Source: Phallusia mammillata (taxonomy: Eukaryota). From it: a stretch of 64,000 bases of DNA. Made by a program: the position numbers and the translations under genes. The first letter of the stretch is position 1, and every line of letters begins with the position of its first letter. Positions 2,641 to 44,800 of the stretch are shown one piece after another. The notes beneath the pieces were generated by a model that was not told the origin of the DNA, ran no database searches, and saw nothing but the letters and a program-made list of their open reading frames with translations. The DNA lies in NCBI GenBank assembly GCA_965637545.1, contig OZ281496.1:3782001-3846000 (forward strand), in the 5' to 3' direction.

Positions 2641-4624
2641 ATCGCACATCATTAACACAACTTTTTTACATCTTAAACTAAGTTAACTCTGTGATGCTAC
2701 CAATGCAAATACAACGTAGCGCCTCTGTGGTAAAACAGGAGTTAGGTACAGTCCCGCAAAAATACTTAAAATGGCGATGATGAATGAGTGCATGTTACGA
2801 CCCTAGTTTGCCAAGATAATTAAGATGGCTATTTAACCTAGACCGTACGTGAGTTCTGTTTAATGTGTTCCCTAACCTGACATGGCTCAGAGTCTGACAA
2901 AATCTCACTCTTGTTTGGGTTAATAAGACAAGGTTGTTATTATGTAAAAGTATCCACAACTGTTAACAAATATACAACTGAGAGCTATTAAGTCATAAGA
3001 TAAACGCAAACTAAACACACATCCGAACACACAATCATGTCAGAACCAAACTTACACTCTACCGTACATCTACAACACAAATATATATACGCCATGGTCG
3101 AGCAATTACGCAATTTCATAGAAACATAAAGAAACATGTTGTAAGTAAGAGAAACAAGCATTACGCAAAGAGGAAGGACGAGAAAGAGAGAGTAGCTAGC
3201 AGACACGAACACTAACGCCTGAGGGCTATAACATTAACTTTGGTTGTCCAGCTAAAAGCATTGCGTGCGAACCAAAGATTGGCAACTGTATAAGAATGCG
3301 ATTAAAAAGTCCATTTTGCAACGGAAAGTTCCAGAACGAAATCAGCGCTTTACCGAATTGTTTAAAACGGTTGCGAAATCCTGAGATGCATGACATAACG
3401 TGACTATTTTCGTGACCAAGTTCAAATGACGTAATCATGTAACGTTAAACACGTTACAGTGCATCCAAAGCAAGAAACCGTGCATGGAAATGCCTGTTTA
3501 TATGGTTACACCCGCGTGTGATCATACTGACCCAATTACAAGTCACCAACAGCCGTAAATCAAATGAAAAATAATATGTCGAGATGTGAATTGTAATGCC
3601 CAAATATAACATTGTAAACATTGGATCAGGTTCGATGGAAAAGGCAATTTTTTACAAAGCGACAATCCCGATATCTATGTAAAGATCGATTCCTCCTCTC
3701 AACCTTGCACCCCTTACTTTGCCCAACCAAGTACGTGCGCCATCCAGCGATTGTTTAAACAAAGGAAGTTTTTATCGCATTGTGACGTCACAACGGATTA
3801 TGGTAAAACTATGGGACCGCGTTCGATGGAAAGAGTAATACTTCTTGATAGTTCATGCAAAATTTCGAATTAGTACCTTGAAAGGTTTGTTGTTAATAGC
3901 TGCCCCAACGGTGGCATTTCCAAGCCACGCAAGCGCTGACTTTAACAGCGTAAAAGGCCTATGCTTGCACCATGTGTACTTTCTTGGCCAGAAATTTTGC
4001 GTACCTTCTACTGGTTTTTCGGCTGGCAACATTGAATGTTTTTTAACCTAGGAACCGTCTTATAAATTTTTATGTCAGATTGTGTTTTGTAAAACATTGC
4101 GCAACTTTTTGTGTTTGAATCTAAAATGCCTTGTTTGTTTGTTTATTGTTTTTTGTTTAAAAACCCGTTGGGCGGGCAACGTCTAAATGCGTTTTGTCAC
4201 GATGGTTTGTAAAAAAGCTGCCTGTGTGACCGGAGCAGGTTTAGATCCCATTGGATTTTGAACACAAGTCGATTTGGTTACTATTCGGCCAAATTAAACG
4301 TATATTTGCTTGATTTGATTTCTGACGTCGCACTTTAGTCTCTTTTTATTTTGGGAAAATCAAAGTTGCTTGCGAAAACTAAAAAAGGTTAACAACTGGA
4401 TAATATTGTTTCGAGGTTACGAAACCCATGACATGCTGATATTTTTGTCTTCGCCTTGTTGCAATAAAAATATTCAGAACCAGGTCGATTATGTATTAAG
4501 ACGCTTGCTGACTTGTCATTGCGCAATGTAAATAGTAGTTTAACATTATTATTGGGCAGCACCAACATTTAAGAACGGGTTCTGGTAACAAATGCTCTCG
4601 CATACTTATGCATATTTATTGCAG

Positions 4625-4818
4625 ACACTCCAGGAGACAAAGATGAAGTAAATGAAGCAGCTGACAACATCTTCCACCTTGTGATGTTTGTTCCTGTGGC
4701 TACTGTAATTATCGCAGCTGGTTACCTTGTATGGGGCAAAATGGCCCAAGATGTAAAATCTAAACAAATTATCCTGCAGATAACATTTCACAATAACTTT
4801 CCGCAAATTGCATTGTAG
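4625..4818 (+). pseudogene. Orphan terminal (TM) exon of a CUB-ZP paralog of the gene-2 type
   Basis: ttgcag|AC ACT CCA GGA GAC... gives DTPGDKDEVNEAADNIFHLVMFVPVATVIIAAGYLVWGKMAQ..., matching 29509-29639. There is an L>P change in the TM, and a +1 indel moves the stop to 4816-4818. No upstream CUB/ZP exons were found in 1-4590. Confidence 0.75.
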
Positions 4819-6492
4819 TGATTCTCACGAGATAAAATCGCTTTAAATTTTCCCCAAAACAACAAACTAGGCAGCGATTTATTCCCAAATTCGGTTTCAA
4901 AAGAGGCTTCAAAAACTAGTCACTACGGTACATTTTATATTTTTTCGTGCTTTATTTTTATTAGAAAATTTCCTCGTCAAAGTTTGTTTGTTTCAATGAC
5001 TGTAGAACAATACAATCGGATGCAATTGATACTGTGTGTGCATTGGTTATACGGACACCAAAGTCACATTTTTGCTTTTCACGTTTCAATTAGCCATTTT
5101 GGAGTAGCATGTATCTCTTAATCAAATTGTGAGAGGAACTACTACGAAGTTTGTAACATTATAAGCAAATGGCTGTTTTTTTAATAGTTGCTACATTTGA
5201 ATGATTCATAGGAACCACTAAGTAAAACTAGAATGGAAGTTTAGAAATGGCAGTCACAGCCAGAATAAAGTTTTATGGTCAAAACATTTACTGGTTAAGT
5301 ATTAAACAAGTTTTTGGATGTCGAGAGGAAATAATCTTAACAAGCTTATTTGTGGTGGATTTGGTTTGCAAGTTGGGATTGTTTCTTATGGTGACTGAAT
5401 ACGATTTTATTTTTAACTTAATGCCTCCACCTAGTGTATTGATTGTTTCCAACGTTACATTTAGTTTCGGATACAAACCAACCTACGACAAACATGTATA
5501 ATCTGTTGAATCAAATCTTCACAAACAAATACACATTTTACATATTTATGTTTCAAAGAAAATCCATGAGTTTCGTTGCTCTATTAGTCTGATATTTTAA
5601 CGGTTTAGATTTGGTTGGTCTTATCTATTTTAACATTTTTATTCATTAAATGTTTTGACCAGTGGAAACACATATGTTTATATTTAACTGTAATTGTTTA
5701 ATAATTTGGATTTCACCTTATTTTTTATTATGGCACCTTTAAAACGTACCGCTAGTTTGCCATATTTATTAACTACTGTCACGCACCAATGATTTTGACA
5801 TCGACGAGTCGCGCCTGCACATTTGTAATTGTCCGGTGAGGTCATGTGAGTTTTGTGCTGCCATGTTTCGTGCTATATTTAGGGTAGTTCTTGCCTGGGC
5901 CTTATGGTGTTTAGAGCGTTCGCATTGTAGCTGCAAAACATGGCGGTGTTGTGTTGCAACTTATTGAAACTTTGGAGATAGCCAACGTCCTTTCAGTTTT
6001 ATATTTATTATTTCTATTAAACTTACATTAGTTGTTCAGTGTGAACATTACACCTTTGTCTTTAGCAGTCAGCCGTCAGTGCAGGAGAAATCTATTAAGT
6101 TAAAGGCGGTGATCCGCTATAATAGTGGATAGGGTTGGGTAAGCTTACTCTGTTCAGTCAAAGTTAACCACCTCGCCTTTCCCTCAAATCCTAGGCCAAA
6201 TCCGGGTTCACCTAACTAATTTCGGTTACAATTATACCGATTTTTAATATTTTTACCTGAATCAAATGGTGTGTCGGTGGCGTTGTAAATGACCAAAATG
6301 TTTGCTTGTGCTGGGAAAGTCTCTGACATGTTCGACCGAACGTCAATTCACCAGTTTGATTGCTTCCTCTTGTATTTGAGCTGTAACTGTGTCGTCATTG
6401 GCGTCGCTTTGCAAGTAGGCGCTTGATAAATAAATGTGAGGCAATATTGAGAAGTTTCAGGTTTCCAACCGGAGTGCCGATATACCCTAATG

Positions 6493-6817
6493 CAGGGGTT
6501 CCCAACCTTTTTACGATCTCATACCAAATGACGCTCTCTACTGCCACGCGTACCACTTCCTGCAGAACAACTAATTGGCTCGACATATATTTAATTGAGA
6601 ATAATAATATTGGCCTACTAACCACTAAAGCACCACAACCAAATTTAACGAGATTTTTGTGTTTGTTTACTGTCTACCAATTGGTCGATGCGCGGTGTAA
6701 ATTTGCTAACAGCGCATCGAAAGTCATTTCCGGGCGCACCCAGTTTTTGTGAAAAAAACGGAAGCTACTGGCGTACCACCTGAAAAACCTTCGCGTACCA
6801 CAGGTTGGGAACCCCTG
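6493..6817. mobile_element. hAT-type MITE (325 bp) just upstream of the gene-1 ATG
   Basis: 16-bp TIR CAGGGGTTCCCAACCT / AGGTTGGGAACCCCTG. Perfect 8-bp TSD CCCTAATG (6485-6492, 6818-6825). Empty site CCCTTATG in the paralog at ~33468. Confidence 0.9.
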
Positions 6818-6900
6818 CCCTAATGTGACATGTTTGTTGCAGAGGGTGCAGATTTCAGGTACTTAGTGATATTGCTGTTAATTATATCTCCAAAGTAAAA

Positions 6901-9900
6901 ATGTCAAGTCGACTATTAAAAGCGGCTCTTTTTGTGAGCGCTCTGAGTATGCTCCTCCGAGGTTAGTGACTTTATTGATTTTTGTTGTGATTTCAACTTA
7001 AGTGGTATGCATGATAAGTCAAATTCTGGCAGTACGACAACATTAAGCTTTGCTGTGCGTTTTTCTGGAGGACCACGAGTACAAGCTCAGTAGAAACGAC
7101 CAAAACAGTGGTCGGCAACCGCCGGTACGCGACGAGTTCGTTATCAGGCTGTATAATCTTTAAGGTTTTAAATGGTCTAAAACATTTTGTCCATGTATCC
7201 CGGGGAATACAAACTAATTTAGGTTTTTTCATTGCCAAATATTTGTAGTTTTTTTTAAGACCGGTCCGCGATAAAACTTTAGTTTCAAAAACGGTCTGCA
7301 GTAGAGAAAAGGTTGCCGACACCTGCTCCAAAAGACATTAATGTTGTGTTGCAAATATCACGGATGTTATATAAAGGGAGCTATGGGTCCCGAGGGTTAC
7401 TTAAAGGGGTAATCGATCTATAAAAGGCTGGGAATCACTGTTCTAGTATTGAGAAATCAGAGAGAGTAACACGAGGACAAAAATTCAGGCCCCACATTGA
7501 TTAGATATAGTTTAGTATTTAAAAAAATATTTTCTACTTTAGTATTAATGCGACATCTTTAGGCGAGCATTCTTCTTGGCTAATACGTATATATCAAGGG
7601 AAATATTGGTTGTGGCCAGGAGAAGTCCTGCAAAGCATCGTTTTCAACTTGATATAGATTTTCGTTTTTTTTTAGTATCCTATAATGCCGCTTTTCGTAT
7701 TTTTTGCAGCTGAAACTGCTTCCTAGCATAATAAACAGAGTGGCAATATCCATCGTTGCGCCTTTTTTAATTTTTATGTATTTTAGTTGCACACCAACCA
7801 AGTAACATCCCACAAACCCTTTATGTCATACAACAATACCTGGTCATACGGCACAAGGGGAGACTGTCCGTTATATTGTCGAACATTGAAAGATATATTT
7901 TCGTAAATTGAAAACTTTGGAATATGTAGGCTTAAACAAGTAAATTGGGCGAAAATACGCCATGGTGGCGAACAGGCTTGTATGAGAGCTAAAGCTTGTT
8001 AAACAGCATGTTATACTGTTTTACTTAAAATGGTGCTTGTATCATTTAGTTTCCGACACACTGTGTGCAGTGGAGAATGTAAGCGGTGCTCATTATTATA
8101 CAACAATTGCCCCTAACTGTAACACATGGGCCCGACGATTTGTTTCAACTGGAGATTCTTCTCGGTTAATTGCACATTTCCGTTTGGGACAGCTTGCTGC
8201 AAACAACTTTTGCAAGGTAAAACTTTACGAACTTAGTCCTTGAAATGAGCCTAATTCGAAATTCGTCCGTTCGTTTCCGCGTAGGTTCGAATTTCATTTC
8301 TTTCAGTTAGATTTTAAATACTTTCCTAACCTTATGCGCAAATCGTGAACAAAAAACATCTAGATTTACGAGGGATCCGACGACCAAGGTAAATTAGCTG
8401 GAACGTTGGAAGGTGGAGGCTTATCTTTTCCAGTTATCGTTGAAAGTTCGTCTGCTTATATATCTTGTGTCACAGACCTCACATCGGAATCTGTGTCGTT
8501 TTGTCTACAACCATGTAAGTCAGGCTTACGATTCATTTAAAACCGAAACTTAAAGCATATATTGTAGATGAAACATGTTTTCGGGTCGATATCAGCAACA
8601 AATAAAATGATGTCAAATCTATTATTTTGCAGACATTGAAAAAAATAATAATTTGCAAACATAGTTTTAATGTAAAAAAATCGCAGTTGATGAGCACTTT
8701 TTAAACAGTGGTGATATTCCATTGCTTATCGGATCGACAACTACACATAAGTCACAGAAAATCGACAACACGATGGTCAAAACAATTGCTTGGAACTATT
8801 TTACCAGCTGTGTTGTCTCAAGCTAAACTTTTTGTGTTTTATAGTTACTTCGTGCGGGGAAGATGTTGCTGATATACCGTACAATTTACTATCTCCGATG
8901 TTTCCTGGTAACTACCCCAACCTTGCTGGTTGTATTTGGAGACTTCAAATGAATTGCAGCACAACCTTATTGTTCCAATTTTCCTCATTTGACACTGAAA
9001 CCAACTACGACATTCTATACGTAAGTGTCTTAACTTATAATATAACCTAAAAATCCAGGAGATATTGACAACGCATATAATCGAGTGGAAACGGTTTGTT
9101 ATCTGTGGGACATTTCCTGCCGCACGCACTGAAAGTAATACATGATTAAGTTTTTTTTTAAATGTATTTTAGAGTAACATATTTATTATAAACTGATTTT
9201 GCAGTGCGAAAAAGTTCACTTCTAATATTGAGGAAAGCAATAAATTTGTTTAAAGTGAAATCCTATTTTTGTTAAGCGCCTAACTAAATGATGAAAAACT
9301 TGCGGCTTTAAGAAGGTATGCGGCCTTTTATGACAAAAAGTGCGCCCCCCCTGCGGCATAATGTTAACATTCCTGAACATACGAAAAGTAACTAAATGGA
9401 GTATTGTTTTCAGTTCAAGAACGAAGAGGGTATTGTGGACAGATTTTCTGGGACGCTTCGATCATCTGATTACACGATGACAGCAACAAATCTTACTGTT
9501 GTGTTTTTGACCGACGGTAGCGGGCAATACAGAGGATTTAATGCGACAGTAGGTGAGGCAAATCTTCTTTCAGGCACACAATTTTGACATGCAAATAATA
9601 ATAATACACTTGATCTCAGCTAGCATGGGTTGTGGTACGATGTAAAAAAACTTCAATATTTATTTTAAAAACTAAGATCTAGTCAATAAGATAACACCGA
9701 ATAATTGCGACAAGTGCTATAGATTTCCTTTTGGTTTAGCTAATTACATTCTAGAGAGTTCCCCACGGGCTCTTTTGACATCAAGTTCTTATTTTTGGTT
9801 CTGTCTCACCAAATTACATCATTTTGTTAGTTCGCTGATGCCAAGCTGTACCATTTTATATGATAAAAATGCGGGGTAAATAAAATCCATTAAATTATTA

Positions 9901-12900
9901 TCACAATATAAAAGCCATGAAATGTTTGAAATAACAAATTTAATAAAAGCAATGAAATAACAAATTTAATGCGTGGAAGTAAATTTTAATCCATAAAAAG
10001 TGGACTAGTGCTCGAACTTTATTATCACGGTTTAAGAATGCTTTTTGTGTAGAAATACAACCAACTGTTGAATGTAGGACTGCAAATTTGATCATAAGGT
10101 AGGTTAATACTTTCTTTTTGATTCTTTTGTGAAATTTATTGATAATTGTTGAAAGTAATAATCAGAAGATTGTTGAAAAAATTTGAAGTATTTCAAGCAT
10201 TTTGTTGTGCTGCCTGTTTTTGTCATAAGCCTGCAATTGCTTGTTTTTCATTGATTGAGACATCTTTTACTTATCAGCAATGGGTCTTCTAATGGGATGC
10301 CGCTAGAAAAACTGCAACATAGTATAAATGTTTGGAAAATAAAAAAAATGACAGGTTGTCTAGACTTTTATAATGCCCAAAAACACGACAGTCCAATTTT
10401 CGCAGAGTAACAGCTGATCAACAGAACACATTAGATTACGAACTCGGTGACACACTTTACATCGCATTGGACAGGGAAACTCCCCTTTCTCAACTCAATA
10501 ACAGCTGCAAGGTCACGGGGTCAAACCCAGTGTTTACGTTTGACATTGGCCAATGCAAAGGTGTTTTTAAGGTAAAATTGGATTTTGTTCTGAACTCATA
10601 GACTATATGTCCTTATTATTTTTTTAGACAACATTATTCGTTAGAAGTAATAAACATTGCATGGCTAGGGGTAATAATAAAGTGCAATAAGCTTTTTATT
10701 GCTGCATAATAAAAATGAAATACCAATTTTGAAATATAATGTAATTTTCGTGCTCTTATACAGAATGAAAACGGTATGGTGTCGGTGTCTTTCCTGATCT
10801 GGAGGTTTCTAGCTCCATCCCCTGCAGTGATCCAGCGTGACGTTCAAAACAAGCTCAATGTGACTTGTTTATTTGACGCGGACCTTCTTATCGCGTCATC
10901 CAAAATTAGTACACAAATCGGGTAAAGCGACGAAAAACAAACCATTATATAACAGCTATGGAGTGGCATTCGGCACAAGACATCATGTACAAGACACACA
11001 GTAGGCGTCATAAAACGTAACACGTAGTCTTTTGTTGACATCACTTTGAAACAAATTGACACTGGGAAAACAGAAATGTTCCATATGATACAAAACATCC
11101 AACCACACCACGAATGGCATACAGCAGTTAACACATTACACACGACACAGAACACATCAATCTACCCATGGCACAAACCACATGACACGCACGACACATT
11201 TGACATGAAATACAGTAAAAGTATACCACATCTGCCACATGTAACAAGACATGCACCCAACAGCACCTGCCGCACTATGTCTGACACGCATCACAGTTTG
11301 TCTTTCCCTTTCAATTTTTATTAATCGCAAACATTTTATTTATTGTAGATCTGCCGAAATTATTGCAAAGAAAAAAGGAAGTTTGGATGTCGACCTAAAT
11401 CTCTTCAGCAACGAATATTTTACCGAAAGCTTGCCCGGAGAAGTAACTGTGCCCAACTACATTTTTGCTAAATTTAAACTAGATGGGATTTCTGTAGGCG
11501 ATGATTACTTTATTGTCCAGGTGAATTGAAAACAAAATGCTTTTAGTGCAAGAAAACACTGCATTTACTAGTTTAGTTTTTAATAGTTCTGGCATCGTTG
11601 CACTGGTTTGTAAATTGAACTGTTAAAGTGGAATACCTTTCTTACAGCTGGAAACCTGTTGGGCGACACGCAGTGGAAACTCCAATAGTTTGCCGAATTA
11701 TCAAATTGTACAAAGCGGGTAAGATATACTTGAATTACCTCAACATTTTTTTCTCGTTTGGGAGCTTATTTCTTCAATGATTAATTTTCCACACCTGTAT
11801 TTCACTCTGTTTAACTTGGAATCGAAATATTTAGATGCGTAGTGCCACCCAGTGGAGGCGAGGCTGCCAACGCTAAGACGTTGATACGAAATTACGAATC
11901 CAACTTTGCAACTTTCAAGTTGATGAGCTTTGTGTGGACAAACTTTACCGACGCAGAACAATTTATCTATATCCACTGCGACGTGACCGTCTGTCATAAT
12001 TCAACTGGACAATGCCCTGAACAGGTGAGTTGAGTTAAGTATGTTGCTTCCAAACTGGTGTGTCCTAGGTTCGCTTGCCAATACGGTATATTTTCTGACA
12101 CCAGCTGCACTCATGAGATTTTACTTGTTTAATCAGTACAAAGGCCGAGTAGTCTGGCGCGTCTGACCCAAAAAGACCTAAAAAAAACTTGATCTGGATT
12201 AGTCCCCCATCCCGCCGTCTCGGGTCCGAACCACATGATAAAAACGATGTTTACTGTCCATAGCTTACATGCAAACTAAAGAGTATTTGAACCCTCTTGT
12301 TTGGTTCAGCTGATAGAGTAATAGCACGGATAATACGCGGTGCCGTGTAGGAATGCTTGGGAGACCGGCCTTTAATCGGCCTGACGCACTGTGTTTATAT
12401 ATATGTGTGTAATTCGGTATGACGCCTTCAATAAAACTGGTGTACAATGAAATATCAATATGAGTGTAATTGTTTTGCAGACTTGTTCTGGTAAGAAACG
12501 GCGATCTGTTGAAGACAATGGTCGCCATCAACTGCTTTCTGCAGGGCCAGTGCATATCGTTCAAGGTACCGGTTATATGCACTTGCTTGGTAACGCAATT
12601 TAAACATCATTTAATCTATATTCTAGATAATATTGCTGATACACGAGCTTTTGCTAAGCAAATTTGTAGTTCTAGCAAGCAGGTCACACCTCTTGGGGCA
12701 TAATAACTTAAGTTTTCGAAATATTTTCCCCATTTATTGTACTGTGGCTTGGTGACTACTTACATAGATGTATATGTGATTAACTTGACTGGTAACATTA
12801 ACAACCGCACCTTTGTTAACTGCCTTGACTTACTTCAAAAAAAGGCTATGTTTGCATCAAAAGACACATATAAATAGGTAAATAAAATTAGACAATTACC

Positions 12901-13272
12901 TTAAAACATATTTCATGGGTTCGAATCCCATCTCTAATTTTATTTTCTTGTATCCGTTGCTGTAACAACGAGACTGGTTCGATGGCTTCTTGCAATCTTG
13001 ACATATACTGCGATTTTTATTATAGCGAACACATGACCGTTTCATGGTTGGCTACATCAATAAATAAACAATTCTTCACACATTTTGTTTTTGTTAAGCA
13101 TGACTTTTTTATCGCTTATACAACAGGAGAAAGAAACGAAGCTATAGAAGGAGTTGGCAACAGCTACCAACTTGTGATGTTTGTTCTTCTGGCTGTAATT
13201 ATTATAGGAGCTGGTTACATCGTATGGGGCAAACTGACCCAGGGTCGCAATGCGAGACAAAATCGCCAGTAA
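6901..13272 (+). CDS. CUB-CUB-ZP-TM protein (CUZD1-like architecture), gene 1, 575 aa, intact
   Basis: 13 GT-AG exons with continuous frame: 6901-6961, 8050-8216, 8364-8514, 8845-9020, 9414-9552, 10053-10098, 10406-10571, 10764-10921, 11349-11520, 11648-11718, 11835-12024, 12481-12565, 13127-13272. Signal peptide MSSRLLKAALFVSALSMLLRG. CUB motifs CGE..SPMFPGNYP...CIW and FLTDGS...GFNA. ZP-C motifs LETCWAT and YIHCDVTVC. Furin site KKRR/S, EHP LSAGPVHIV, TM LVMFVLLAVIIIGAGYIVW. Confidence 0.9.
7106..7325 (-). mobile_element. hAT (Charlie-like) MITE in intron 1
   Basis: TIRs CAGTGGTCGGCAACC / GGTTGCCGACACCTG with a degenerate TSD (gaccaaaa/ctccaaaa). The reverse complement matches 45432-45665; the orthologous copy is at 33758-34415. 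Confidence 0.75.
12143..12244 (+). mobile_element. Short tRNA-derived SINE (older copy) in intron 11
   Basis: GGCCGAGTAGTCTGGCGCGTCTGAC...GGGTCCGAACC...AAAA. Same family as 39231-39349 and 39928-40017. Confidence 0.55.
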
Positions 13273-13754
13273 ATGAACTTTTTATTATTCTCATCATAGC
13301 ATTGTTTGTGTGCATGTAAATAACTATTTACTTTTGAAGATAAAAACAAATAACAAATTAAAGCTGTTTTTCATTTAAAAAAACGCTGTTTAAAATTTTG
13401 TAAATAAATATTATGCATCATTTCACTTAATACATGCATCATTCATAGCTAAAGTGCTGACATGAAATTAGTTGTCAAAGTATTGTTGTGTATCTGTTTA
13501 ATTGTTATGTACAATATAATCACATAGGGTCAAAACTGTGTCTTTTGGCTTAGCTTATGCAATGAATCAGGAAATAACATTTTCAATTATTTTAGCGCGG
13601 TAGCCTCTGTTGAGCGTGGTTATATTCACCTTTGAATCTCATTTATGGTATTTAATTTAACACAAATTAAACCCATAACAAAATGATTTTTGTCTGGGGG
13701 TCACTAACCCTATGCCCGCTAGACTAATTCTTAAAAGAGCCGGTTGGGCACCGT

Positions 13755-33757: not shown

Positions 33758-34415
33758 CAGTGGTCGGCAACCGCCGGTACGCGGTCGGGTACGAGTTTCT
33801 GACGGGTTCGTTATCAGGCTGTATAATCTTTCAGATTAAATGGTCTAAAACATTTTGCCCATGTATCCCGGGGATTATAAACTAATTTAGGTTTTTTCAT
33901 TGCCAAATATTTGCAGTTTTTTTTAAGACCGGAAAGCTTTAGTTTCAAAAACGGTCCGCAACAGAGTTGCAAGCGGGCCCGAAATCTGAGCCCGAAACCG
34001 GCCCGAACCCGAAAGTATGAGCCCGAAGCCCGGCCCGAACCCGAAACGTTTTTGCGAAGCCCGTTTAGGCCCGAAATTTTGATTGACAGGATGAGAAAGA
34101 AAAAAGAGATAGACAACAAATACAATGATCAATAGTAGACCATGGGGTAAACAATACGTTTTAGAGTAGAGTGGGCATTAGGTCAAAGCCAGAGTTTCTT
34201 AGCCGAGTGATTTTATTTTGTTTTTTTAAATGGCGGACACGGAACGTAAAGTCAGGCCCGTTTTAAGCCCGTTTTCTCACAAATACCTAAGCCCGAACCC
34301 GGCCCGAACCCGGCCCGAACCCGGCCCGAACCCGGCCCGAACCCGAACCCGGCCCGAAAAGCCCGGCCCGACTTGCAACTCTGGTCCGCAATAGAAAAAA
34401 GGTTGCCGACACCTA
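33758..34415 (-). mobile_element. hAT (Charlie-like) MITE, ortholog of 7106-7325, interrupted by a nested element
   Basis: Same TIRs and flanks as 7106-7325, split at 33961/34384. Confidence 0.8.
33962..34383. mobile_element. Young GC-rich hAT MITE (422 bp) nested in another MITE
   Basis: TIR CAGAGTTGCAAG / CTTGCAACTCTG. Perfect 8-bp TSD GTCCGCAA (33954-33961, 34384-34391). Subterminal GGCCCGAACCC arrays. Absent from the left copy. Confidence 0.9.
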
Positions 34416-34684
34416 CTCCAAAAGACAGTAATGTTGTGTTGCAAATATCACGGGTGTTATATAAAGGGAGCTACGGGTCCAGAGGGTTACTTAAAGGGGT
34501 AATCGATCTATAAAAGGCTGGGAATCACTGTTCTGGTATTGAGAAATCAGAGAGAGTAACACGAGGACAAAAATTCAGGCCCCACATTGATTAGATATAG
34601 TTTAGTATTTAAAAAAATATTTTCTTCTTTAGTATTAATGCGACATCTTTAGGCGAGCTTCTTTCTTGGCTAATACGTTTATAT

Positions 34685-35204
34685 CAGTGGTTCCCAACCT
34701 TTTTGTAGTCACGGACCCCTTATATAATTTTTTTCGCTCCACGGACCCCCAACGTAATTTAGTTTTTTTTGCGTTTTCTGCATTATACGTTATTATACTT
34801 TCGTTTTTCGGGGGCAGAATTTTAATCAACCTTCACAGTCCTTTAACCTCAATAAAGTTCTGTACTGTAGCAGCCAATGCAACGAAGAGATGAATTTTCT
34901 AGTGTACAATACTTAAAACAAAGCACAAAGAATGCTATTGTTATTTGTTGTGGTGTGTGTTGTGATGTCACAATGGAGGTAACAATCACCATAACAGTTC
35001 ATAACAATAACAATCATAACAGTTTTCCTAATCCAAGGGTTTGATAAACAGTTTGCACTTATTTACAGGATTGTAAAAACGGTTTGGGAACCTAAAAATA
35101 TTGTACTGTTGTTAATGCTACTGCAAATATTTGCCTTCACGGACCCCCTGAAACCATCTCACGGACCCCTTAGGGGTCCGCGAACCCCAGGTTGGGAACC
35201 ACTG
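34685..35204. mobile_element. hAT MITE (520 bp) in gene-3 intron 1
   Basis: Perfect 16-bp TIR CAGTGGTTCCCAACCT, perfect TSD GTTTATAT, internal CACGGACCCC repeats. Empty site at ~7587 in gene 1. Confidence 0.92.
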
Positions 35205-38200
35205 GTTTATATCAAGGGAAATATTGGTTGTGGCCAGGAGAAGTCCTGCAAAGCATCGTTTTCAACTTGATATAGATTTTTTTTAGTATCCTATAATGCC
35301 GCTTTTCGTATTTTTAGTATCCTATAATGCCGCAGCTGAAACTGCTTCCTAGCATAATAAACAGAGTGGCAATATCCATCGTTGCGCCTCTTTTAATTTT
35401 TATGTATTTTAGTTGTACACCAACCAAGTAACATCCCACAAACCCTTTATGTCATATAACAATACCTTGTCATACGGCACAAGGGGAGACTGTCCGTTAT
35501 ATTGTCGAACATTCAAGATATATTTTCGTAAATTGAAAACTTTGGAATATGTAGGCTTAAACAACTAAATTGGGCGAAAATACGCCATGGTGGCGAACAG
35601 GCTTGTATGAGAGCTAAAGCTTGTTAAACAGCTTGTTATACTGTTTTACTTAAAATGGTGCTTGTATCATTTAGTTTCCGACACACTGTGTGCAGTGGAG
35701 AATGTAAGCGGTGCTTATTATTATACAACAATTGCCCCTAACTGTAACACATGGGCCCGACGATTTGTTTCAACTGGAGATTCTTCTCGGTTAATTGCAC
35801 ATTTCCGTTTGGGACAGCTTGCTGCAAACAACTTTTGCAAGGTAAAACTTTACGAACTTTGTCCTTGAAATGAGCTCAATTCGAAATTCGTCCGTTCGTT
35901 TCCGCGTAGGTTCGAATTTCATTTCTTTCAGTTAAATTTTAAATACTTTCCTCACCTTATGCGCAAATCGTGAACAAAAAACATCTAGATTTACGAGGGA
36001 TCCGACGACCAAGGTAAATTAGCTGGAACGTTGGAAGGTGGAGGCTTATCTTTTCCGGTTATCGTTGAAAGTTCGTCTGCTTATATATCTTGTGTCACAG
36101 ACCTTACGACGGAATCTGTGTCGTTTCGTCTACAACCATGTAAGTAAGGCTTACGATTCATTTAAAACCGAAACTTGAAGCATATATTGTAGATAAAACA
36201 TGTTTTCGGGTCGATATCAGCAACAAATAAAATGATGTCAAATCTATTATTTTGCAGACTTTGAAAAAAATAATAATTTGCAAACACAGTTTTAATGTAA
36301 AAAAATCGTAGTTTATGAGCACTTTTTAAACAGTGGTGATATTCCATTGCTTATCGGATCGACAACTACACATAAGTCACAGAAAATCGACAACACGATG
36401 GTCAAAACAATTGCTTGGAACTATTTTACCAGCTGCGTTGTCTCAAGCTAAACGTTTTGTGCTGTTTAGTTACGTCGTGCGGGGAAGATGTTGAAGATAT
36501 ACCGTACAATTTACTCTCTCCAATGTTTCCTAGTAACTACCCCAACTTTGCTGGTTGTGTTTGGAGATTTCAAATGAATAGCAGCACAACCTTAGTGTTC
36601 CAATTCTCTACATTTAACACTGAGGGCGAATCCGACATTCTTTACGTAAGTGTCTTAACGTATAATATAACCTAATTTAAGGGTTCCAACAGAGGAAATC
36701 CAGAGATTGCGTGCAAAATGAGGGTAGTGTGGACAAAATATTTTTTTCTCTCTCATTATTTAACATGGTAATATTGTCGACGCAAATAATCGAGTGGAAA
36801 CGGTTTGGTATCTTTAGGAGATTTCTTGCAATACGCACTGAATTAATATGTGGCCCTCTGCGGCTAAATGTTAGCATTTCTGATCAAACCAAATATAAAT
36901 AAATACCGTATTGTTTTCAGTTCAAGAACGAAGAAGGTAATGTGGACAAATTTTCTGGGTCGCTTGGGTCATTTAACTACACGGTGACTTCATCAAATCT
37001 CACTGTCATGTTTGAGAGCGACGATAGCGTGCTAAGAGTCGGATTTAATGCCAAAGTAGGTGAGGCAAATCTCCTTTCAGGCACAAAATGTCGACATGCA
37101 AATGATAAAAATACACTTAAGCTCAGCCAGGATGGGTTGTAGGTTCACGATGGTCTGTAAAAAAAACTTCTTTGTGATTTAAACTAAAATCTAACTAATA
37201 AGATAGCAACGAAAATTTTTTGACTCCTTTTACTGCATTGCGACAAGTGCTTTAAATTCCTTTTAGATCAGCTAATTAGAATCTAGAGAGTTCCCAACAA
37301 GCTATTTTGACATCAAGTTCTTTTTTTTTGGTCCTGTCTCACCAAATTACATCGTTTAGTTCGATGCCAAGTTGTAACATTTTATATGATAAAATACGGG
37401 GTAGGTAAAATCCATTAAATTAATATCACAATATAAAGGCAATGAAAGGTCTAAAATAACAAATTTAATATTCAAAAGTAAATTTTAATCCACAAAAGGT
37501 TGAAAAATGCTTTATTTATACTTTATTTAATTTTTTTTATACCGTAGAAATACAACCATCTGTTGAATGTAGGACTGAAAATTTGATCATCAGGTAGGTT
37601 AATATTTTCTTTTTGATTCGTAAGTGAAAATTATTGATGCTTTTTGAAAGTCTTTTATAATCAAAAGGTTATTGAAAAAAATTCTTTATTGATTGAGACA
37701 TCTTTTACTTCTCAGTTTTCAATGGGTCTTCTAATGGGATGCGGCGATAAAAACAGCAATATAGTATAAATGTTTGAAAAGTAAGCAAAAAAAGAACAGG
37801 TTGTCTAGACTTTTATAGTGTACAAAAACTTAGCAGTGTAATCTTCGCAGAGTAACAGCTGATCAACAGAACACATTAGATTACGAACTCGGTGACACGC
37901 TTTTCATCGCATTGGACAGGGAAACTCCCCTTTCTCGACTCAATAACAACTGCAAAGTCACGGGGTCAAACCCAGTGTTTACCTTTGACATTGGCCAATG
38001 CAAAGGTGCTTTTAAGGTACAGTTGGATTTTTTTTCCAAACACATAGAAAGTTTGTCCTTATTATTTTTAGAAAACATTAGCTATTAGAACCAATTAACA
38101 ATACATAGTTAGGTATAATGATAAGTGTTATAATCTTTTTCTTGCTGCATAATAAAAAACTGCCAATTTTGAAATATAATGTAATTTTCCTGCTAATATA

Positions 38201-38419
38201 CAGAATGAAAACGGTACGGTGTCGGTGTCTTTCCTGATCTGGAGATTCCTAGCTCCATCCACTGCCGTGATCCAACGCGACGTTCAAAACAAGCTGAATG
38301 TGACTTGTTTATTTGACGCGGACCTTCTTATCTCGTCATCCAAAATTCGTACAAAAATCGGGTAAAGAGGCGAAGAACAAACATTTATATAACAGCTAAG
38401 ATGAACATATTTAAAGTAG

Positions 38420-38590
38420 GATCAGCCCTGAAGCGTCGATGAAGACCAGCGATCATGGCGTACATATCGATAAATCATAGAACGCCAGGCTTATTAAAGG
38501 CGTGTACCGAGTGAGCTGGTCCCCCGAGCATTGGGAATGTCAGATGGAAATGCTTGGGAGACCAGCTGATTCGGCACACGCATTCTATTT
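38420..38590 (-). mobile_element. SINE body fragment in gene-3 intron 8
   Basis: Reverse complement matches 56200-56265 (GCCTGGCGT...GACGCTTCAGG(G/A)CTGATCCTA). Not seen in gene-1 intron 8. Confidence 0.5.
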
Positions 38591-39230
38591 AGACAAGCTC
38601 ATATTATTGTGGAGAGTGTATTTACCAATGCTGCTCAACAAAATGCACGGTTTTAATCTAGTGCGTTAATTTGTATTTGATAATCTCGCGTACACACCAG
38701 GGAGTTAAAAATAGTAAGCTATTTGTCATATTGATTGCCATTTTTATTTCCGAACATTTTTAAATATTGTAGATCTGAAGAAATTTCGGCGAAGAATGCA
38801 GGAACTTTGGATGTTGCCCTAAATCTCTTTAGCAACGAATATTTTACCGAAAGCTTGCCCAGCGAAGTCACTGTACCTAACTACATTTTTGCTAAACTTA
38901 AACTTAATGAGATTTCCGTAAGCAACGATGACTTTATTGTTCAGGTGACTTGAAAACAAACAGCTTTTAGTGCAAGAAACCATTGTATTCTTTAATTTAA
39001 TATTCACTATTCTGGCATCGTTGGTCTAATTTGTAATTTATACTCTTAAAGTGGAATATATTTTTGCACAGCTAGAAGCCTGTTGGGCGACACGCAATGA
39101 AAACTCCGATAGTGTGCCGAGTTACCAAATTGTACAAAGCGGGTAAGATATACTTGCATTACCTCAACACATTTTTTTCTCATTTGGGAGCTTATTTGTT
39201 TAGTGATTAATTTTCCACCTGTATTTCACT

Positions 39231-39349
39231 ATGTTTTTTTTCACGGGGTTCGAACCCAGGACACTCCCGGGGAAAAATCCCGATCAAGGTTTTTTTTGAG
39301 TCTGTATGTGGGTCAGGCGCGCCAGACCATTCGGCCAAGTTCCTGCCCA
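39231..39349 (-). mobile_element. Young ~119-bp tRNA-derived SINE with TSD
   Basis: Reverse complement has box A TGGCCGAATGG, box B GGTTCGAACCC and an A9 tail. 9-bp TSD TATTTCACT (39222-39230, 39350-39358). Empty site at ~11798. Confidence 0.82.
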
Positions 39350-39927
39350 TATTTCACTGTGCTTAACTTTGCATCGAAACTTTTAAATGCGTTGCGCCAC
39401 TCAGTGGAAGCGAGTCCGCCGAGGCGAAGATTTTGATCCGAAACTACGAATCCAACTTTGCAAACTTTCAAGCTGATGAGCTTTGTGTGGTCAAACTTTA
39501 CTGACGCAGAACAATTTATCTACATCCACTGCGACGTGACCGTCTGTTATAATTCAACTGGACAGGTGAGTTGAGTTGACCGTATTTAGGACTTGTGATA
39601 GAGATTACAGTTTACCAAGAAATGTTAGTCAAAAAATATAAGAAGGTGTAGGAATATCGGTTTTAGTGATATCAGTTTTTTCTAAACCAACAAAACCACT
39701 GTATATTGCTAAACCACAGTGAACTTATAACGATATATCTTTATAGATAAACTAAAGAATTTCATAGGCGTTTATGGCCAGTTGTGACATTAAAAAGATT
39801 TAGTGAGGCGCGGTTTTATAGTCTGTTGCACCCAACTAACTGGAGTGTCCTAGGTTCGCTTGTCATTACGGTATATTTTCTGTCAACAGTTGCACTCATA
39901 AGATTTTATATGGCAAACCAGTGCAAA

Positions 39928-40017
39928 GGCCGAATGGTATGGCGAGCCTCACCCATATAAAGACATAAAATAATTTGATCGGGATTCGTTCCCTCGGGTT
40001 CGAACCACATGAAAAAT
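39928..40017 (+). mobile_element. tRNA-derived SINE, ortholog of 12143-12244
   Basis: GGCCGAATGGTATGGCG...GGGTTCGAACCACATGAAAAA. Confidence 0.55.
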
Positions 40018-41860
40018 AACGATGTTTATTGTCCGTAGCTTATATACAAACTAAAGAGTATTTAAACCCTCTTGTATGGTTCAGCTGATAGGGTAATAGC
40101 ACGGAAAATACGCCGTGCCGTGGAGGAATGCTTGGGAGACCGGCCCTTAATCGGCCTGGCGCACTATGGATTATATATATGTGTGCCGTGATCGCCTTAA
40201 TTCGGTATGACGCCTTTAATAAGACTGGTGTACGATGAAATATCAATATTAGTATAATTGTTTTGTAGTCTTGTTCTGGTAAGAAACGACGATCTGTTGA
40301 AGACAATGGTCGCAATCAACTACTTTCTGCAGGGCCAGTGCACATTGTAGTTTTCGAAATATCTTCCCCTTGTATAGTACTATGTCTTGCTGACTACTTA
40401 CGTATATGTTCATGCGATGAACTTGACTGGTAACAATCCCACCTTTTATTTAATTTTCATGGAAGGGCACATATGAAAGGTAAATAAAACAATAATTATC
40501 GTAAAACATATTTCATGGGTTCGAATCCCATCACTAATTTTCTTTTTCTTGTATCCGTTGCTTTAACAACCAGACCGATTCGCTGGCCTCTTGCAATCTT
40601 GACATATACTGCGACTTTCATGGGTATAACCAACACATGTCCGCTTCAGTGCTGACTACATCGATATATAAGCAGTTATTTACCTATTTTTATCGTTTTT
40701 TTGTTAAGCATGACCTTTTTTTTATCTGTTATACAACAGAAGAAAGAAACGAAGCTATAGAAGGTGCTGGCAACAGCTACCAACTTGTGATGTTTGTTCT
40801 TCTGGCTGTAATTATTATCGGAGCTGGTTACATCGTATGGGGCAAACTGAACCAGGATCGCAATGCGAGACAAAATCGACTGTAGATAAATGTTTTAGTA
40901 TTCTCATCATGGCTTGTTAATCTGCATTTAAAAGCTATTGCCTTTGAAGATCAAAAAACAAATAACAAATTAAAGCTGTTTTTCATAGGGCTGTTTGTTA
41001 GTTTAGTTATCAAATAAATATTATGCATCAATTCACTTATTACATGCTTCATTCATAGCTGACATGAAATTACTTTGTCAAAGTATTGTCGTGTTTCCGT
41101 TTAACTGTTGTATACAATATAATCAGATGGGCCTTTGAATCCTTTGAATTAGCTGATATCATGAGTCAGAAAAAAACATTTTTAAATATTTTAGCGTGGT
41201 AGCCTGTGTTGACCGAGGATATATTGGCCTTTAAATCTCATTTATGGTAATTAATTCAACACAAACAAAACCCATACCACCGTCCTCAAAAAGGCTTATT
41301 GTCTAGAAGTCACCAACACTATGCCCGTTAGACTAATTCTTAAAAGAGCCGGTTGTGCCTCCAGTTTACACAATAGGCTACGCCTCATGACGATTCTTTT
41401 TAAAGTGGTGCAATAGGTTTATCTAACCATGGACAATTAATACTTAACAAAGCATTATGTAACAATCATGGAATTCGACTGTTACGTCATACGCGCTATA
41501 ATAAATGGCAGTTGGTGAACAAAGTGGTACCTGGAATGCTAAACTGATGTAACACATTTTGATTGTGACACATTGCAAGATGAAATAATAAGCCACACTA
41601 GAGAAAAGAGTACCGGAAGTCAATCGGGAAAAACTTCTCAAAAATTCAAACTAATAAACATTCCGTTATTCCCGATTTATGGAGATTTATTAATTGATTG
41701 GTTAGTTTCATGCCTCAGGAAATACAATTTGTTCCCAAAATATTACAGAAAGCAAAATGTCGCATGTGCTGCAAAATTCCAAAACTGATCGGTATTTGCG
41801 AAATTAGGTAATGATGTAGAATAACGTTTTGTACAAATTTACAGTCTATGAGCCTTGGAA

Positions 41861-44800
41861 TTAACGATAACGTGTGGAGCCCCGATTTCTTCCATGATGC
41901 AACTGGTTGTGGCGAATTTCACCTCTGTTCTCATTCCTTTGCATTCGCTCTTCTGCTGGGGCTCCATTGGGGTCGAAATGGTCAAACGCGATTCGTGCTA
42001 AAATATGAGAAATAATTGCTAACATGAAACACAGAGTTTTTATATTAAACATGGTGTTTATTACCTATGTTTTGTGGGGGTCGGTTATGTCGGTCGGATT
42101 TAACCTTGGGTGAAACCTAAAGAGGAAATTGTCATTAAAGATTTTACTGTGAACGCAGAAAATTGATTAAGTACCATTGTTATCAAACGTATTCAATGTT
42201 TTTGTCAGACATTGTTGTAAAGCTATAACCACCAAAAAAGTTCAAATAAATCATCAGATTCGCAAAATAAACATTTTTATTTGTTAAATACTGATAATAA
42301 CCTGAAATGTCCTGTAAAAATGTCTTTCTATTTTAAAAATGTTAAAGCGCCTTTTATGGAGTAGAATTAAATTCCCAGCAAAAAATAAAAAAATGAAAAA
42401 TAAACTGACACATCATTTATTTTCTTGCTTGATTCACCATGGCTTAACGGTATGTGGAATGCAAATTTGCGTAAGAAATCAACTAACTATTGTATTGACT
42501 TTACCGGTCTAAAGCAAAATAACTGAATCTTTTGTTAAACATAAAAACTGATAACGAATGTATAGAAAACGTGGTCGGGATACAGGCTCAGCAAACAGGA
42601 AAAACTTCGACACAGAACTGAACGTTACAAAGCAGCAAATTAAACCAATGAACGTGGGCAATGCCAAAACTATCACAAAGTTTTTGACTAGTCAAATTAA
42701 GTAAGTTGGTTTCTAAGTTAGTCTGCGTTGTCACTAGTGTTTGTGCCTTCACATTTAAAGCAATCACATTTGCCTTGTTGCGTAAATAAATAGTTCATAT
42801 ATTTAATTTGTGTCTTTATGTAGTCAAACGTTTGTTTGTTTTAGGCAGTGATACAAAACGCACGAAATTAATCACTAACTTCCAAACTTATTTACTTACA
42901 CTAGCTTCCAAATACCTAGGGCAGTTCCCGTCCGGTCCAATTTCACTGTCATCATCATAATCATCAAATAAAAACGAATCTAGGATCTTTAGACTCTTAG
43001 ATTTTAATGGAGCAGTTTTGTTATTTCCTAAAGAAATAATGTTTAGATCTTTTTTGTGTATTTTCTTTTCAAACAATAAAAAAGAAACGAAACAAAACGG
43101 ATTGGTTTTAGAACACTATTTGTTCACAAGTATATTGATGAAAATAAAGATCCAAATATACTTAAAAAACGACATGCTTCATTTATTAACCGTTTCGGCA
43201 AATGCTCATGTCATCATTAGAGATAAGAAGGGCCACATCAGTTATACCCGTTTATATGCACTTGAGTCACGCAAAACAATGATAGAAAGGTACGAAATAA
43301 GCGTCGCTTGGAAATGGCAGATAAACAAGATTTGGGCTCTTATTTTTGTCGTTAGATTAATTGTATTTTAATAATTTGGCATGCATTCTAGTCTATTCGA
43401 GAAATTTGAGAAAACTCTTTCCGTGTTTTCCAGAAAAGCGGATAATTTGAAGCAGTTAACAAGTAAATTGGATGCCCTTCAGTTTTACTGTTACTAAATA
43501 AACCATCATCAATCGTGATTGTGGTTTATTCTAATTTAATACTATCGTCAAATACCCACGTGTGGTCCTCGGCTTTGGTGTTGCTGGTTTTGGAAGTTTT
43601 GAAATTACTTTCTTTTTCGCTAAAAACAGAAATGCTTGATTAAATAATGACACTTTTTGATACGTTCGTGACCAACTGAACGCAAAAGTACAGAAAAGCT
43701 GATGACACCATACACCATAACTGCTTCACTCTTTGCATAATTCCGGTAAGTGACACAAAGAGATGAGTTATTAATTTAACAGCTGAAGAGGGGTAGGGGT
43801 AGAAACACTTTTTAAAGTGTCGTTTTTCTCATACTTACTTGGGACTTGAGACTTCTTGGTTTCGTGTTTTAAAGTTTTTGGTATTACTTTCTGTTTTGCT
43901 AATACACAGTTGTGATTCAAAATATTTTATCATTTACTTTCCTTCCAAACAGAAATCCACAAAATTATTAACTTACCAGTATAGGTACAATGGCTCCTTA
44001 ACTTTGGTGCTTCGTGGTTAATGATTTTCGGATTCACTTGTACTTGTACTGGAAACAAAAAAAGCTTTAAGTTTGTTTTGTTTTTTCAAAGTTTTTGTTA
44101 CTTCTTTATAAATAGATGTAAGTTCAGAAATACCACTTAGTCGTTCACCCTTTAGTTTAAAAGATATATATATATTTCGCTAATACAGCATCGTCAGTAC
44201 CTTATTCAAATGGAATCCTTAAACCAACTATTCTTTATAAGTCTCACAATTTATTGATTGATGTTATGTTTGCAAAAGAGTTATTTTTAACTTTCTATCT
44301 TTTGGAATTTGCGTCTTTGGTTTATACCAAACAAGCCTTTTTCAACGAAACCCAGTGTGTTTGTTCAATGTAACTTACGCAAATACACAAAAAAGCTACG
44401 AGCCTAAATTTCCCTTTACCGTTGTATTGTGGTGATGAGCTTGTGTTGCATTCATGTTCACCGTATTTAACATTACATGAAACCTAGATAACAAAATAAA
44501 GCAGAAAGACAATTTATTTCTCAAAATTTCTTTACTTTTTTAATGAAAAGAGATTTCTTACCTTAGAGTACGGATTACTTGGTGGTAGAATGGCGCCCTT
44601 AGCAAAATGAAAACAGCATTAGAGGCACATAGGAATTTTAATTGTGAAATACACAGTTCAATTTTATTAACTCAGGCTTGGTTATTTACATAGTAATCTG
44701 AAAGAAAATAAGTTTAGATGGAAAAGACCCAATAAATAATGACCGATAAAATTGGAAGAATTCGAAGTTTGTTCTACTGTTAAACTTTTCACCACGCTTT

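What the first reader, a model, noticed from the sequence alone, without database searches (positions are those of the whole stretch)
4590..44562. A paired two-gene cassette (CUB-ZP membrane protein + micro-exon gene, tail to tail) is the unit of duplication
Both copies of the ~14-15 kb block keep a plus-strand CUB-CUB-ZP-TM gene converging on a minus-strand micro-exon gene (stops 13272/15808 and 40885/41861). Further micro-exon copies lie at both window ends. Linked, co-duplicated, birth-and-death gene pairs with variable extracellular parts are typical of recognition loci (gamete, allorecognition or immune). That the two families act together is inference only.
Basis: partly seen in the sequence, partly recalled or inferred. 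Interest (0 to 1): 0.75.

Follow-up and report, generated by a model that had tools for sequence, protein, structure and literature searches.

The report
Interleaved ZP and small-exon gene array
A sea-squirt chromosome carries a roughly 2 Mb array in which surface-protein genes (CUB-ZP-membrane anchor) often sit tail to tail with a previously undescribed small-exon gene. The two copies in this window each have one broken partner, and nothing yet shows that the two proteins work together.

Summary
The duplication is real.

It is not a clean two-gene cassette, for four reasons:
- **The block ends cut through genes.** The left end keeps only the last exon of an upstream ZP gene. The right end lies in an intron of the minus-strand gene.
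- **Each block has one broken partner.** Block A has an apparently intact ZP gene (two junctions unresolved), but only the last five exons of the small-exon gene, with two premature stops. Block B has a complete 12-exon, 235-aa small-exon gene, but its ZP gene is frameshifted.
- **A third ZP gene** lies between the blocks with no tail-to-tail partner.
- **A third gene family** (MGxCxxxC start) sits head to head with the small-exon gene.

Across the genome, all three families are amplified in one region (C3, about 2.9-5.2 Mb). Of 58 small-exon terminal exons, 26 lie 2.4-4.0 kb from a convergent ZP-C exon (chance expectation 4.7).

The small-exon family is under purifying selection (dN/dS 0.17-0.47), matches no Pfam family and had no credible relative in a 1.84-billion-protein library (last-exon profile). 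It has no signal peptide, which argues against an extracellular recognition partner. Expression and functional coupling remain untested. Other notes of this scan had already described each family separately.

The parts
4615..18431 (.). Block A of the duplication
   Evidence: Collinear self-BLAST pieces to 29499-44495 at 72-95% identity.
29499..44495 (.). Block B of the duplication. It contains an internal repeat of the 5' region (30660-31386 ~ 32730-33446).
4612..4767 (+). Orphan membrane-anchor exon left from an upstream ZP gene. No other ZP exon lies in 1-4600.
   Evidence: 49-65% amino-acid identity to the last exons of genes 1-3; translation.
6901..13272 (+). ZP gene 1: signal peptide, CUB-like domain, CUB, ZP module, KKRR cleavage site, membrane anchor. 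It appears intact. Resolved exons: 6901-6961, 8050-8216, 8364-8514, 8845-9020, 9414-~9550, ~10400-10571, 10764-10921, 11349-11520, 11648-11718, 11835-12024, 12481-~12594, ~13026-13272.
   Evidence: Pfam CUB and ZP-C; PDB cubilin CUB match; phase-consistent AG/GT junctions. The exon 5/6 and 11/12 junctions are not resolved.
15808..18466 (-). Small-exon gene copy A, a 3' remnant. Exons: 18466-18452 (15 nt; family-conserved but left out of the model), 18419-18356, 18126-18055, 16874-16756, 16025-15974, 15911-15808. It has an in-frame TAG in the acidic exon, an early terminal stop and no 5' exons.
23140..29639 (+). ZP gene 2, a more diverged paralogue. Eleven exons are in frame with kept splice sites. 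It has no convergent small-exon partner.
33553..40885 (+). ZP gene 3. Exons 1-9 are intact. Exon 10 (about 39387-39564) has a 1-nt indel giving stops. Exon 11 is only partly alignable. The membrane-anchor exon is kept.
41861..48503 (-). Small-exon gene copy B, a complete 12-exon model giving 235 aa. Exons: 48503-48480, 47128-47087, 46562-46524, 46216-46184, 45273-45232, 44868-44830, 44597-44562, 44483-44420, 44048-43977, 43027-42900, 42116-42065, 41997-41861.
   Evidence: All AG/GT sites, all phases consistent, only the terminal stop. Exons are shared with other family copies.
49020..49085 (+). First coding exon (MGACALLC...) of a third co-amplified gene, head to head with copy B. The two start codons are 517 bp apart.
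58836..60556 (-). Third family member, with no ZP partner in the window. Exons: 60556-60530, 60077-60051, 59280-59239, 59093-59036 (GC donor), 58954-58836.
165..191 (-). A 27-nt exon unit of a further family member that runs off the left end of the window.

Best explanation
The window is a slice of a roughly 2.3 Mb array on contig C3, built by repeated segmental duplication of multi-gene units. Three families are interleaved in it.
- **ZP genes.** CUZD1-like genes encoding a signal peptide, CUB-like domain, CUB, ZP module and membrane anchor.
- **The small-exon gene.** An orphan gene of 10-12 small exons. It encodes a 180-235 aa P/S/N/Q-rich protein that is probably disordered and cytosolic, with a conserved C-terminal RIAFDNFDPNG motif.
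- **A third gene.** It starts MGxCxxxC, which looks like a lipid-anchor start.

A recurrent layout is ZP gene, then the small-exon gene tail to tail, then the third gene head to head. The two families stay neighbours because duplications copy whole stretches, not because anything shown here ties their functions together.

The A/B duplication is one such event, with arbitrary breakpoints. It copied the last exon of one ZP gene, a whole ZP gene and the 3' half of the small-exon gene. Since then gene 3 and copy A have decayed, which is birth-and-death turnover.

Shown: the anatomy, the copy numbers, the adjacency statistics, the coding constraint and the lesions. Inferred: the duplication mechanism (unequal or non-allelic recombination), the cytosolic location and the lack of functional coupling.
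For: - **Block structure and breakpoints:**
- **Copy numbers, almost all on C3 between 2.9 and 5.8 Mb:** at least 112 hits for the small-exon terminal exon, at least 150 for the ZP-C exon, at least 128 for the CUB exon and at least 25 for the MGxC exon.
- **Adjacency:** 26 of 58 against 4.7 expected; 16 of 20 fetched loci.
- **Head-to-head third gene:** seen in the window and in L001, L003 and L012.
- **The small-exon family is coding:**
  - Splice sites are kept and exon indels are multiples of 3.
  - The stop position is kept within each C-terminal subtype.
  - dN/dS is 0.17-0.47.
  - Exon lengths are identical in 12 copies.
  - Of the 6 copies whose start exon lies inside the fetched locus, 5 give an uninterrupted 180-aa frame and one is frameshifted.
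- **Lesions:** copy A and ZP gene 3.
- **Re-duplication:** near-100% copies of window 18500-20900 and of the block A exons lie at C3 3.52-3.53 and 4.12-4.13 Mb, so the truncated layout is itself carried in larger duplicons.
- **Gene histories:** ZP and small-exon histories are coupled deeply but not among young copies.
- **Independent samples:** DNA runs from four studies hold 82-94% of the sampled 31-letter words of 12600-18599.
Against: - No expression data were obtained for either gene, so co-regulation or co-function is not excluded.
- The adjacency is very strong and orientation-specific, which could also reflect selection to keep the genes together.
- The copy lists from the genome search are lower bounds.
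- Many copies are recent duplicates of each other, so the number of independent events behind '26 of 58' is smaller.
- The near-100% identical distant copies could partly be assembly artefacts.
- The N-terminus of the small-exon protein rests on a gene model without RNA support.
Confidence: 0.65

Rival explanations
1. The ZP gene and its convergent small-exon neighbour form a functional two-gene recognition cassette (gamete, allorecognition or immune). It is kept together and diversified by selection, like linked receptor-ligand pairs.
For: - The convergent adjacency is far above chance.
- Deep subfamilies co-diverge.
- The CUB heads are more diverged than the ZP stalk: 44-58% against 73-86% amino-acid identity between genes 1 and 2.
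- The small-exon family has variable front ends and a conserved end piece.
Against: - The small-exon protein model has no signal peptide or membrane segment. It cannot be an extracellular ligand unless it is exported unconventionally.
- In both window blocks one partner is broken.
- Only 26 of 80 ZP-C exons in the cluster have such a partner.
- There is no coupling of histories among young copies.
- dN/dS is below 1 everywhere tested.
- No expression evidence was found.
Confidence: 0.15
2. The three co-amplified families form one signalling module. The CUB-ZP protein would be a surface receptor. The small-exon protein would be a cytosolic disordered adaptor with a docking motif at its end. The MGxCxxxC protein would be anchored by lipid to the inner face of the membrane.
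For: - All three families are confined to the same 2-Mb region.
- The orientations are fixed: tail to tail, and head to head with about 0.5-0.7 kb between start codons, which looks like a shared promoter.
- The predicted locations would be complementary.
Against: This rests entirely on inference from gene order and short motifs. The lipid-anchor start is a pattern only. There are no expression, interaction or cross-species data. Linkage alone is expected from segmental duplication.
Confidence: 0.1
3. Blocks A and B are alleles, or an assembly artefact of one locus, rather than paralogues.
For: - The region is highly repetitive, and near-100% identical copies lie hundreds of kb away.
- The window contains an assembly gap at 57914-58113.
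Against: - A and B differ by 5-28%, with different lesions and different structures.
- They lie on one contig with a third gene between them.
- The 3' part of block A is found in DNA runs of four studies.
Confidence: 0.03
4. The minus-strand 'micro-exon gene' is not a protein-coding gene. It would be conserved non-coding sequence or a repeat.
For: - No RNA support was found on the stretch laid.
- There is no Pfam family and no relative in the 1.84-billion-protein library.
Against: - Splice sites are kept and exon indels are in frame.
- The stop position is kept.
- dN/dS is 0.17-0.47.
- Models of 10-12 exons stay open in many copies.
- The stretch laid covers only the broken copy A.
Confidence: 0.03

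Closest known systems
Vertebrate CUZD1 (CUB and zona pellucida-like domains 1). Its architecture is recalled from established knowledge of the family.
   Same: Signal peptide, CUB domain(s), ZP module, basic cleavage site, single membrane anchor and short tail.
   Different: There are more than 100 tandem copies here. The first head domain is not statistically a CUB. Orthology was not tested. Tissue and ligands are unknown.
Schistosome micro-exon genes (MEGs)
   Same: Much of the coding sequence is in small symmetric phase-0 exons. In copy B these are 24, 42, 39, 33, 42, 39 and 36 nt. Both are multi-copy, lineage-restricted families with variable products.
   Different: There is no signal peptide here. 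Five exons are 52-137 nt and are not symmetric. Exon skipping was not shown. There is no sequence similarity. The host is a free-living chordate.
Linked self-incompatibility pairs of Ciona (s-Themis and v-Themis; review PMC9265791)
   Same: Two unrelated genes are tightly linked in an ascidian, one of them a surface protein.
   Different: Themis partners are a sperm membrane receptor and a secreted egg-coat protein, with proven polymorphism and genetics. Here one partner looks cytosolic, and polymorphism, gamete expression and genetics were not tested. That review mentions no CUB-ZP gene in such a role.
Ordinary birth-and-death multigene arrays built by segmental duplication
   Same: Higher-order repeats, breakpoints inside genes, a mix of intact genes and pseudogenes, and patchy gene conversion (dS from 0 to 0.4 along one gene pair).
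   Different: Three unrelated families are interleaved in fixed orientations, and one of them has no known relatives.

Membership tests
CUZD1-like CUB-CUB-ZP-TM proteins | N-terminal signal peptide | tested here: met
   Exon 1 of genes 1-3 encodes an M-S-x-R-L start followed by a hydrophobic run, with a phase-1 donor. This was judged by eye, not with a predictor.
CUZD1-like CUB-CUB-ZP-TM proteins | Two CUB domains | tested here: inconclusive
   The second domain passes Pfam CUB (E 3e-8 and 2e-4 on its two exons) and matches cubilin CUB. The first domain has no Pfam hit, no BLASTP match to CUB2 and hhalign E 0.18. It shows only a CUB-like residue pattern.
CUZD1-like CUB-CUB-ZP-TM proteins | ZP module (ZP-N plus ZP-C) | tested here: inconclusive
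   ZP-C passes Pfam on exon 10 (29.5 bits against a cut-off of 24.6) and is near the cut-off on exon 9. The ZP-N exons gave no Pfam hit on their own. Only three of the four expected cysteines are placed, because the exon 5/6 junction is unresolved.
CUZD1-like CUB-CUB-ZP-TM proteins | Basic cleavage site followed by a membrane anchor and a short tail | tested here: met
   KKRR lies in exon 11. A hydrophobic run of about 21 residues and a tail of about 15 residues lie in the last exon.
CUZD1-like CUB-CUB-ZP-TM proteins | Orthology to vertebrate CUZD1 | not testable with these tools
   Joined gene models could not be sent to the search tools. Exon-wise word search is limited by length.
Schistosome-type micro-exon genes | Most of the coding sequence in symmetric micro-exons of up to 36 nt | tested here: not met
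   Seven of the 12 exons are symmetric phase-0 exons of 24-42 nt. Only three are 36 nt or shorter, and more than half of the coding length lies in exons of 52-137 nt.
Schistosome-type micro-exon genes | Secretory signal peptide | tested here: not met
   The model starts MERLMDDS, with an in-frame TAA directly upstream, and has no hydrophobic stretch in 235 aa. This rests on a gene model without RNA.
Schistosome-type micro-exon genes | Protein variation by exon skipping | not tested
   No transcripts were available.
Linked recognition gene pairs (Themis-like) | Tight physical linkage of the two partners | tested here: met
   The stop codons are 1.0-2.5 kb apart in the window. Adjacency is enriched across the genome.
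Linked recognition gene pairs (Themis-like) | Both partners exposed outside the cell | tested here: not met
   The small-exon protein model lacks a signal peptide and a membrane segment.
Linked recognition gene pairs (Themis-like) | High allelic polymorphism and complementary expression | not tested
   No per-individual or tissue data could be obtained.

The most novel reading that the evidence does not exclude
The fixed three-gene layout may be a lineage-specific receptor-adaptor module, amplified to dozens of variants in one sea-squirt chromosome region. In this reading the CUB-ZP surface protein converges on an orphan disordered cytosolic protein, which in turn shares a short divergent promoter with a lipid-anchored protein. 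The variable heads would sense external ligands (self, gametes or microbes). The conserved RIAFDNFDPNG end piece would act as the docking site.
Probability: 0.12. Interest if true: 0.75.

Novelty: new member of a known kind. Interest (0 to 1): 0.4.

Why it matters
If the neighbourhood is only hitch-hiking, this is a well-documented example of how segmental duplication co-amplifies unrelated genes and litters an array with half-genes. That is useful for annotating this genome, where the small-exon family is unlikely to be picked up by homology-based gene finders.

If the three families do work together, the locus would be a large, diversified surface-receptor system in the closest invertebrate relatives of vertebrates, built from a ZP scaffold and an orphan adaptor. 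That would be worth testing for roles in fertilisation, allorecognition or immunity.

Tried and rejected
- **RNA check.** Four runs guessed to be RNA were laid on 12600-18599. Only short repeat-like pieces matched, with unlike flanks, so this gives no evidence for or against expression. The stretch also turned out to hold the broken copy A.
- **Library search.** A profile of the small-exon terminal exon was run against 1.84 billion representative proteins. The only hit was a bacterial repeat protein sharing a D-P-D/N-G-x-P motif, which I rejected as spurious.
- **Control for that search.** A word search with the ZP membrane-anchor exon found nothing at all. Short ORFs of this genome's ZP family are therefore not in that collection either, and 'no relatives' says little about same-species annotation.
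- **Databases.** Pfam on all the larger small-exon exons, Rfam and a tRNA scan gave nothing.
- **Whole-block DNA search of the genome.** Only one candidate was scored, so it was uninformative.
- **Contiguous flanks.** Pairing statistics therefore rest on hit lists re-keyed by hand.
- **Positive selection.** Pairwise dN/dS was below 1 in every exon.
- **Overlapping antisense 3' ends.** The first poly(A) signals leave the convergent genes 0.7-2 kb apart.
- **Literature.** No paper in the library links micro-exon genes with ascidians, and none of the ascidian papers retrieved, nor the review read, describes a CUB-ZP array.
- I redid it from coordinates alone.
- **Joined models.** Joined spliced models were built only inside scripts and were never sent to a search or folding tool. 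No full-length search or fold was therefore done.
Full report
**Setting.** The window is C3:3782001-3846000 of a 240 Mb genome. Earlier notes of this scan call it a sea squirt, and two name Phallusia mammillata; I did not verify this. The window is 32-41% G+C and has one assembly gap at 57914-58113, which I left untouched.

**The duplication.** Self-BLAST gives about 15 collinear pieces joining 4615-18431 to 29499-44495 at 72-95% identity.
- A six-frame comparison shows a third, more diverged ZP gene between the blocks (exons from 23140 to 29639).
- It also shows that both blocks begin inside the last, membrane-anchor exon of the preceding ZP gene.
- In block B that exon belongs to gene 2. In block A it is an orphan at 4612-4767, with no other ZP exon upstream.

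**The ZP genes.**
- *Domains.* Pfam confirms a CUB domain on two exons and ZP-C on two exons. The CUB exon also matches cubilin in the PDB.
- *Gene models.* Exon 1 encodes a signal peptide. Ten junctions have canonical, phase-consistent sites shared by genes 1, 2 and 3. A KKRR site, a hydrophobic anchor and a short tail follow.
- *Open points.* The first head domain has a CUB-like residue pattern but failed every statistical test. The exon 5/6 and 11/12 junctions stay unresolved.
- *Integrity.* Genes 1 and 2 are in frame. Gene 3 has a 1-nt indel with stops in exon 10 and a partly lost exon 11.
- *Selection.* Pairwise dN/dS is 0.14-0.76 in the exons with measurable dS. dS varies from 0 to 0.42 along the gene 1 / gene 3 pair, which suggests patchy gene conversion rather than diversifying selection.

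**The minus-strand gene is a real coding family.** I aligned 22 copies (three in the window, 19 in fetched loci).
- The last two exons keep their AG and GT sites. One copy has a GC donor.
- Length changes inside exons are all multiples of three, whereas the intron between them changes freely.
- The stop is at a fixed place within each of the two C-terminal subtypes, which differ by two codons; copy A alone ends earlier.
- The end piece carries an invariant R-x-A-F-D-x-F core within RIAFDNFDPNG.
- dN/dS on that exon is 0.17-0.47.
- Copy B gives a 12-exon model (48503-41861) with an uninterrupted 235-aa frame.
- The related 'type I' copies keep exon lengths 24/39/42/39/15/64/89/36/58/137 in 12 loci. 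Of the 6 whose start exon lies inside the locus, 5 give an intact 180-aa frame and L008 carries a 1-nt deletion. L009 carries a 2-nt deletion, L005 has lost an acceptor and L015 lacks one exon.
- The start (MERLMDDS or MERFMDDS) has an in-frame TAA directly upstream. The protein has no hydrophobic stretch and is rich in P, S, N and Q. It is therefore probably a soluble, disordered intracellular protein.
- No Pfam family matches. A profile of the end piece found only a spurious bacterial hit among 1.84 billion representative proteins. A control search shows that this genome's own short ORFs are not in the related word-search collection either, so this absence is weak evidence.

**Copy A is a remnant.**
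- It keeps the family's conserved 15-nt exon and the last five exons of the 12-exon copy-B model.
- The six P/Q-rich micro-exons and the start exon of copy B (44597-48503) have no counterpart in 18432-23800.
- Its acidic exon holds an in-frame TAG, and its last exon ends 11 codons early.
- The right edge of the A/B homology (18431 / 44495) therefore lies inside this gene.
- Block A pairs an apparently intact ZP gene with a dead small-exon gene. Block B pairs an intact small-exon gene with a damaged ZP gene.

**Genome-wide picture.**
- The small-exon terminal exon has at least 112 hits, all but one between 2.93 and 5.18 Mb of C3.
- The ZP-C exon has at least 150 hits, about 100 of them at 80% identity or more, mostly on C3 between 2.9 and 5.8 Mb.
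- The CUB exon has at least 128 hits.
- Of the 58 significant terminal exons, 26 have a convergent ZP-C exon 2.4-4.0 kb away, against 4.7 expected by chance and a maximum of 13 in 2000 trials. Conversely, only 26 of 80 ZP-C exons in the cluster have such a partner.
- In 20 fetched loci, 16 show the ZP anchor exon 1.1-2.3 kb from the terminal exon. That sample was partly chosen for pairing.
- Many unpaired copies sit about 12 kb upstream of the next ZP gene, as copy A does relative to gene 2.
- A third gene, whose first exon reads MGACALLC..., lies head to head with the small-exon gene. The starts are 517 bp apart in the window and about 670 bp apart in L001, L003 and L012.
- That first exon has at least 25 copies, all within the same region. 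About half of them lie 4-7 kb from a terminal exon in this head-to-head layout (hand check).

**Is the pair copied as a unit?**
- Distances between ZP anchor-exon regions and between small-exon 3' regions correlate overall (Mantel r 0.75, p 0.0006). That correlation is driven by one deep subfamily split.
- Within the 11 distinct young type-I units the correlation is weak (r 0.25, p 0.13).
- The ZP 3' ends of genes 1 and 3 resemble type I (6-17% distance). Their small-exon neighbours are 40% away from type-I copies.
- Window 18500-20900 and the block A exons have near-100% copies at 3.52-3.53 and 4.12-4.13 Mb. Gene 2, gene 3, copy B and the third gene recur together at an offset of 189 kb.
- The array therefore grows by large duplicons whose ends ignore gene boundaries, with exchange between units.

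**Expression and alleles.**
- The one read-laying run showed only short dispersed-repeat matches on 12600-18599, so expression is untested.
- DNA runs from four studies hold 82-94% of that stretch's sampled 31-letter words.
- Together with the 5-28% divergence and the different lesions, this makes an allelic or purely artefactual origin of A and B unlikely.
- The first poly(A) signals leave the convergent genes non-overlapping.

**Verdict.** It is one layout inside a three-family, birth-and-death array.
- The most likely reason for the linkage is co-duplication by proximity (confidence 0.65).
- A functional module is not excluded.
- Other notes of this scan had already described the ZP array and the small-exon family separately.
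- What is added here: their quantified interleaving, the third family, the full small-exon gene model and the broken state of both window pairs.

Noticed in passing
window 49020-49085 (+) and onwards to about 57800: A gene whose first exon reads MGACALLC..., a pattern like a myristoyl/palmitoyl anchor start. It lies head to head with the small-exon gene. That first exon has at least 25 copies, all on C3 between 3.05 and 5.11 Mb. I did not model the rest of the gene.
   Followed up: partly
window 15615-15740, 17012-17067, 17758-17816, 13785-13864: Short stretches matched by many high-depth contigs of RNA-like runs, always with unlike flanks. They are probably dispersed repeats (SINE- or MITE-like) that are transcribed elsewhere. 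No Rfam or tRNA match was found in the window.
   Followed up: partly
L001, L003, L008, L015 (gene-oriented, about 1.5 kb upstream of the PQYNP exon): A tRNA-like stretch (clover-leaf-like arms followed by a conserved tail) sits in an intron of the type-I small-exon genes. It looks like a tRNA-derived SINE.
   Followed up: no
window 30660-31386 and 32730-33446: The 5' region upstream of ZP gene 3 is duplicated within block B at 85% identity.
   Followed up: no
L003, L006, L011 (15-nt exon of the small-exon gene): The acceptor of the 15-nt exon is AT instead of AG in three otherwise intact copies, and copy B lacks this exon. It may be optional, since skipping it keeps the frame.
   Followed up: partly
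window 36919-37061 (exon 5 of ZP gene 3): Two compensating 1-nt indels shift a short stretch of the second CUB domain out of frame and back, relative to gene 1.
   Followed up: no
window 17248-17303 and 34291-34358: Perfect short tandem repeats: a 9-nt unit repeated 6 times inside the copy A remnant, and 11- and 17-nt units upstream of gene 3.
   Followed up: no
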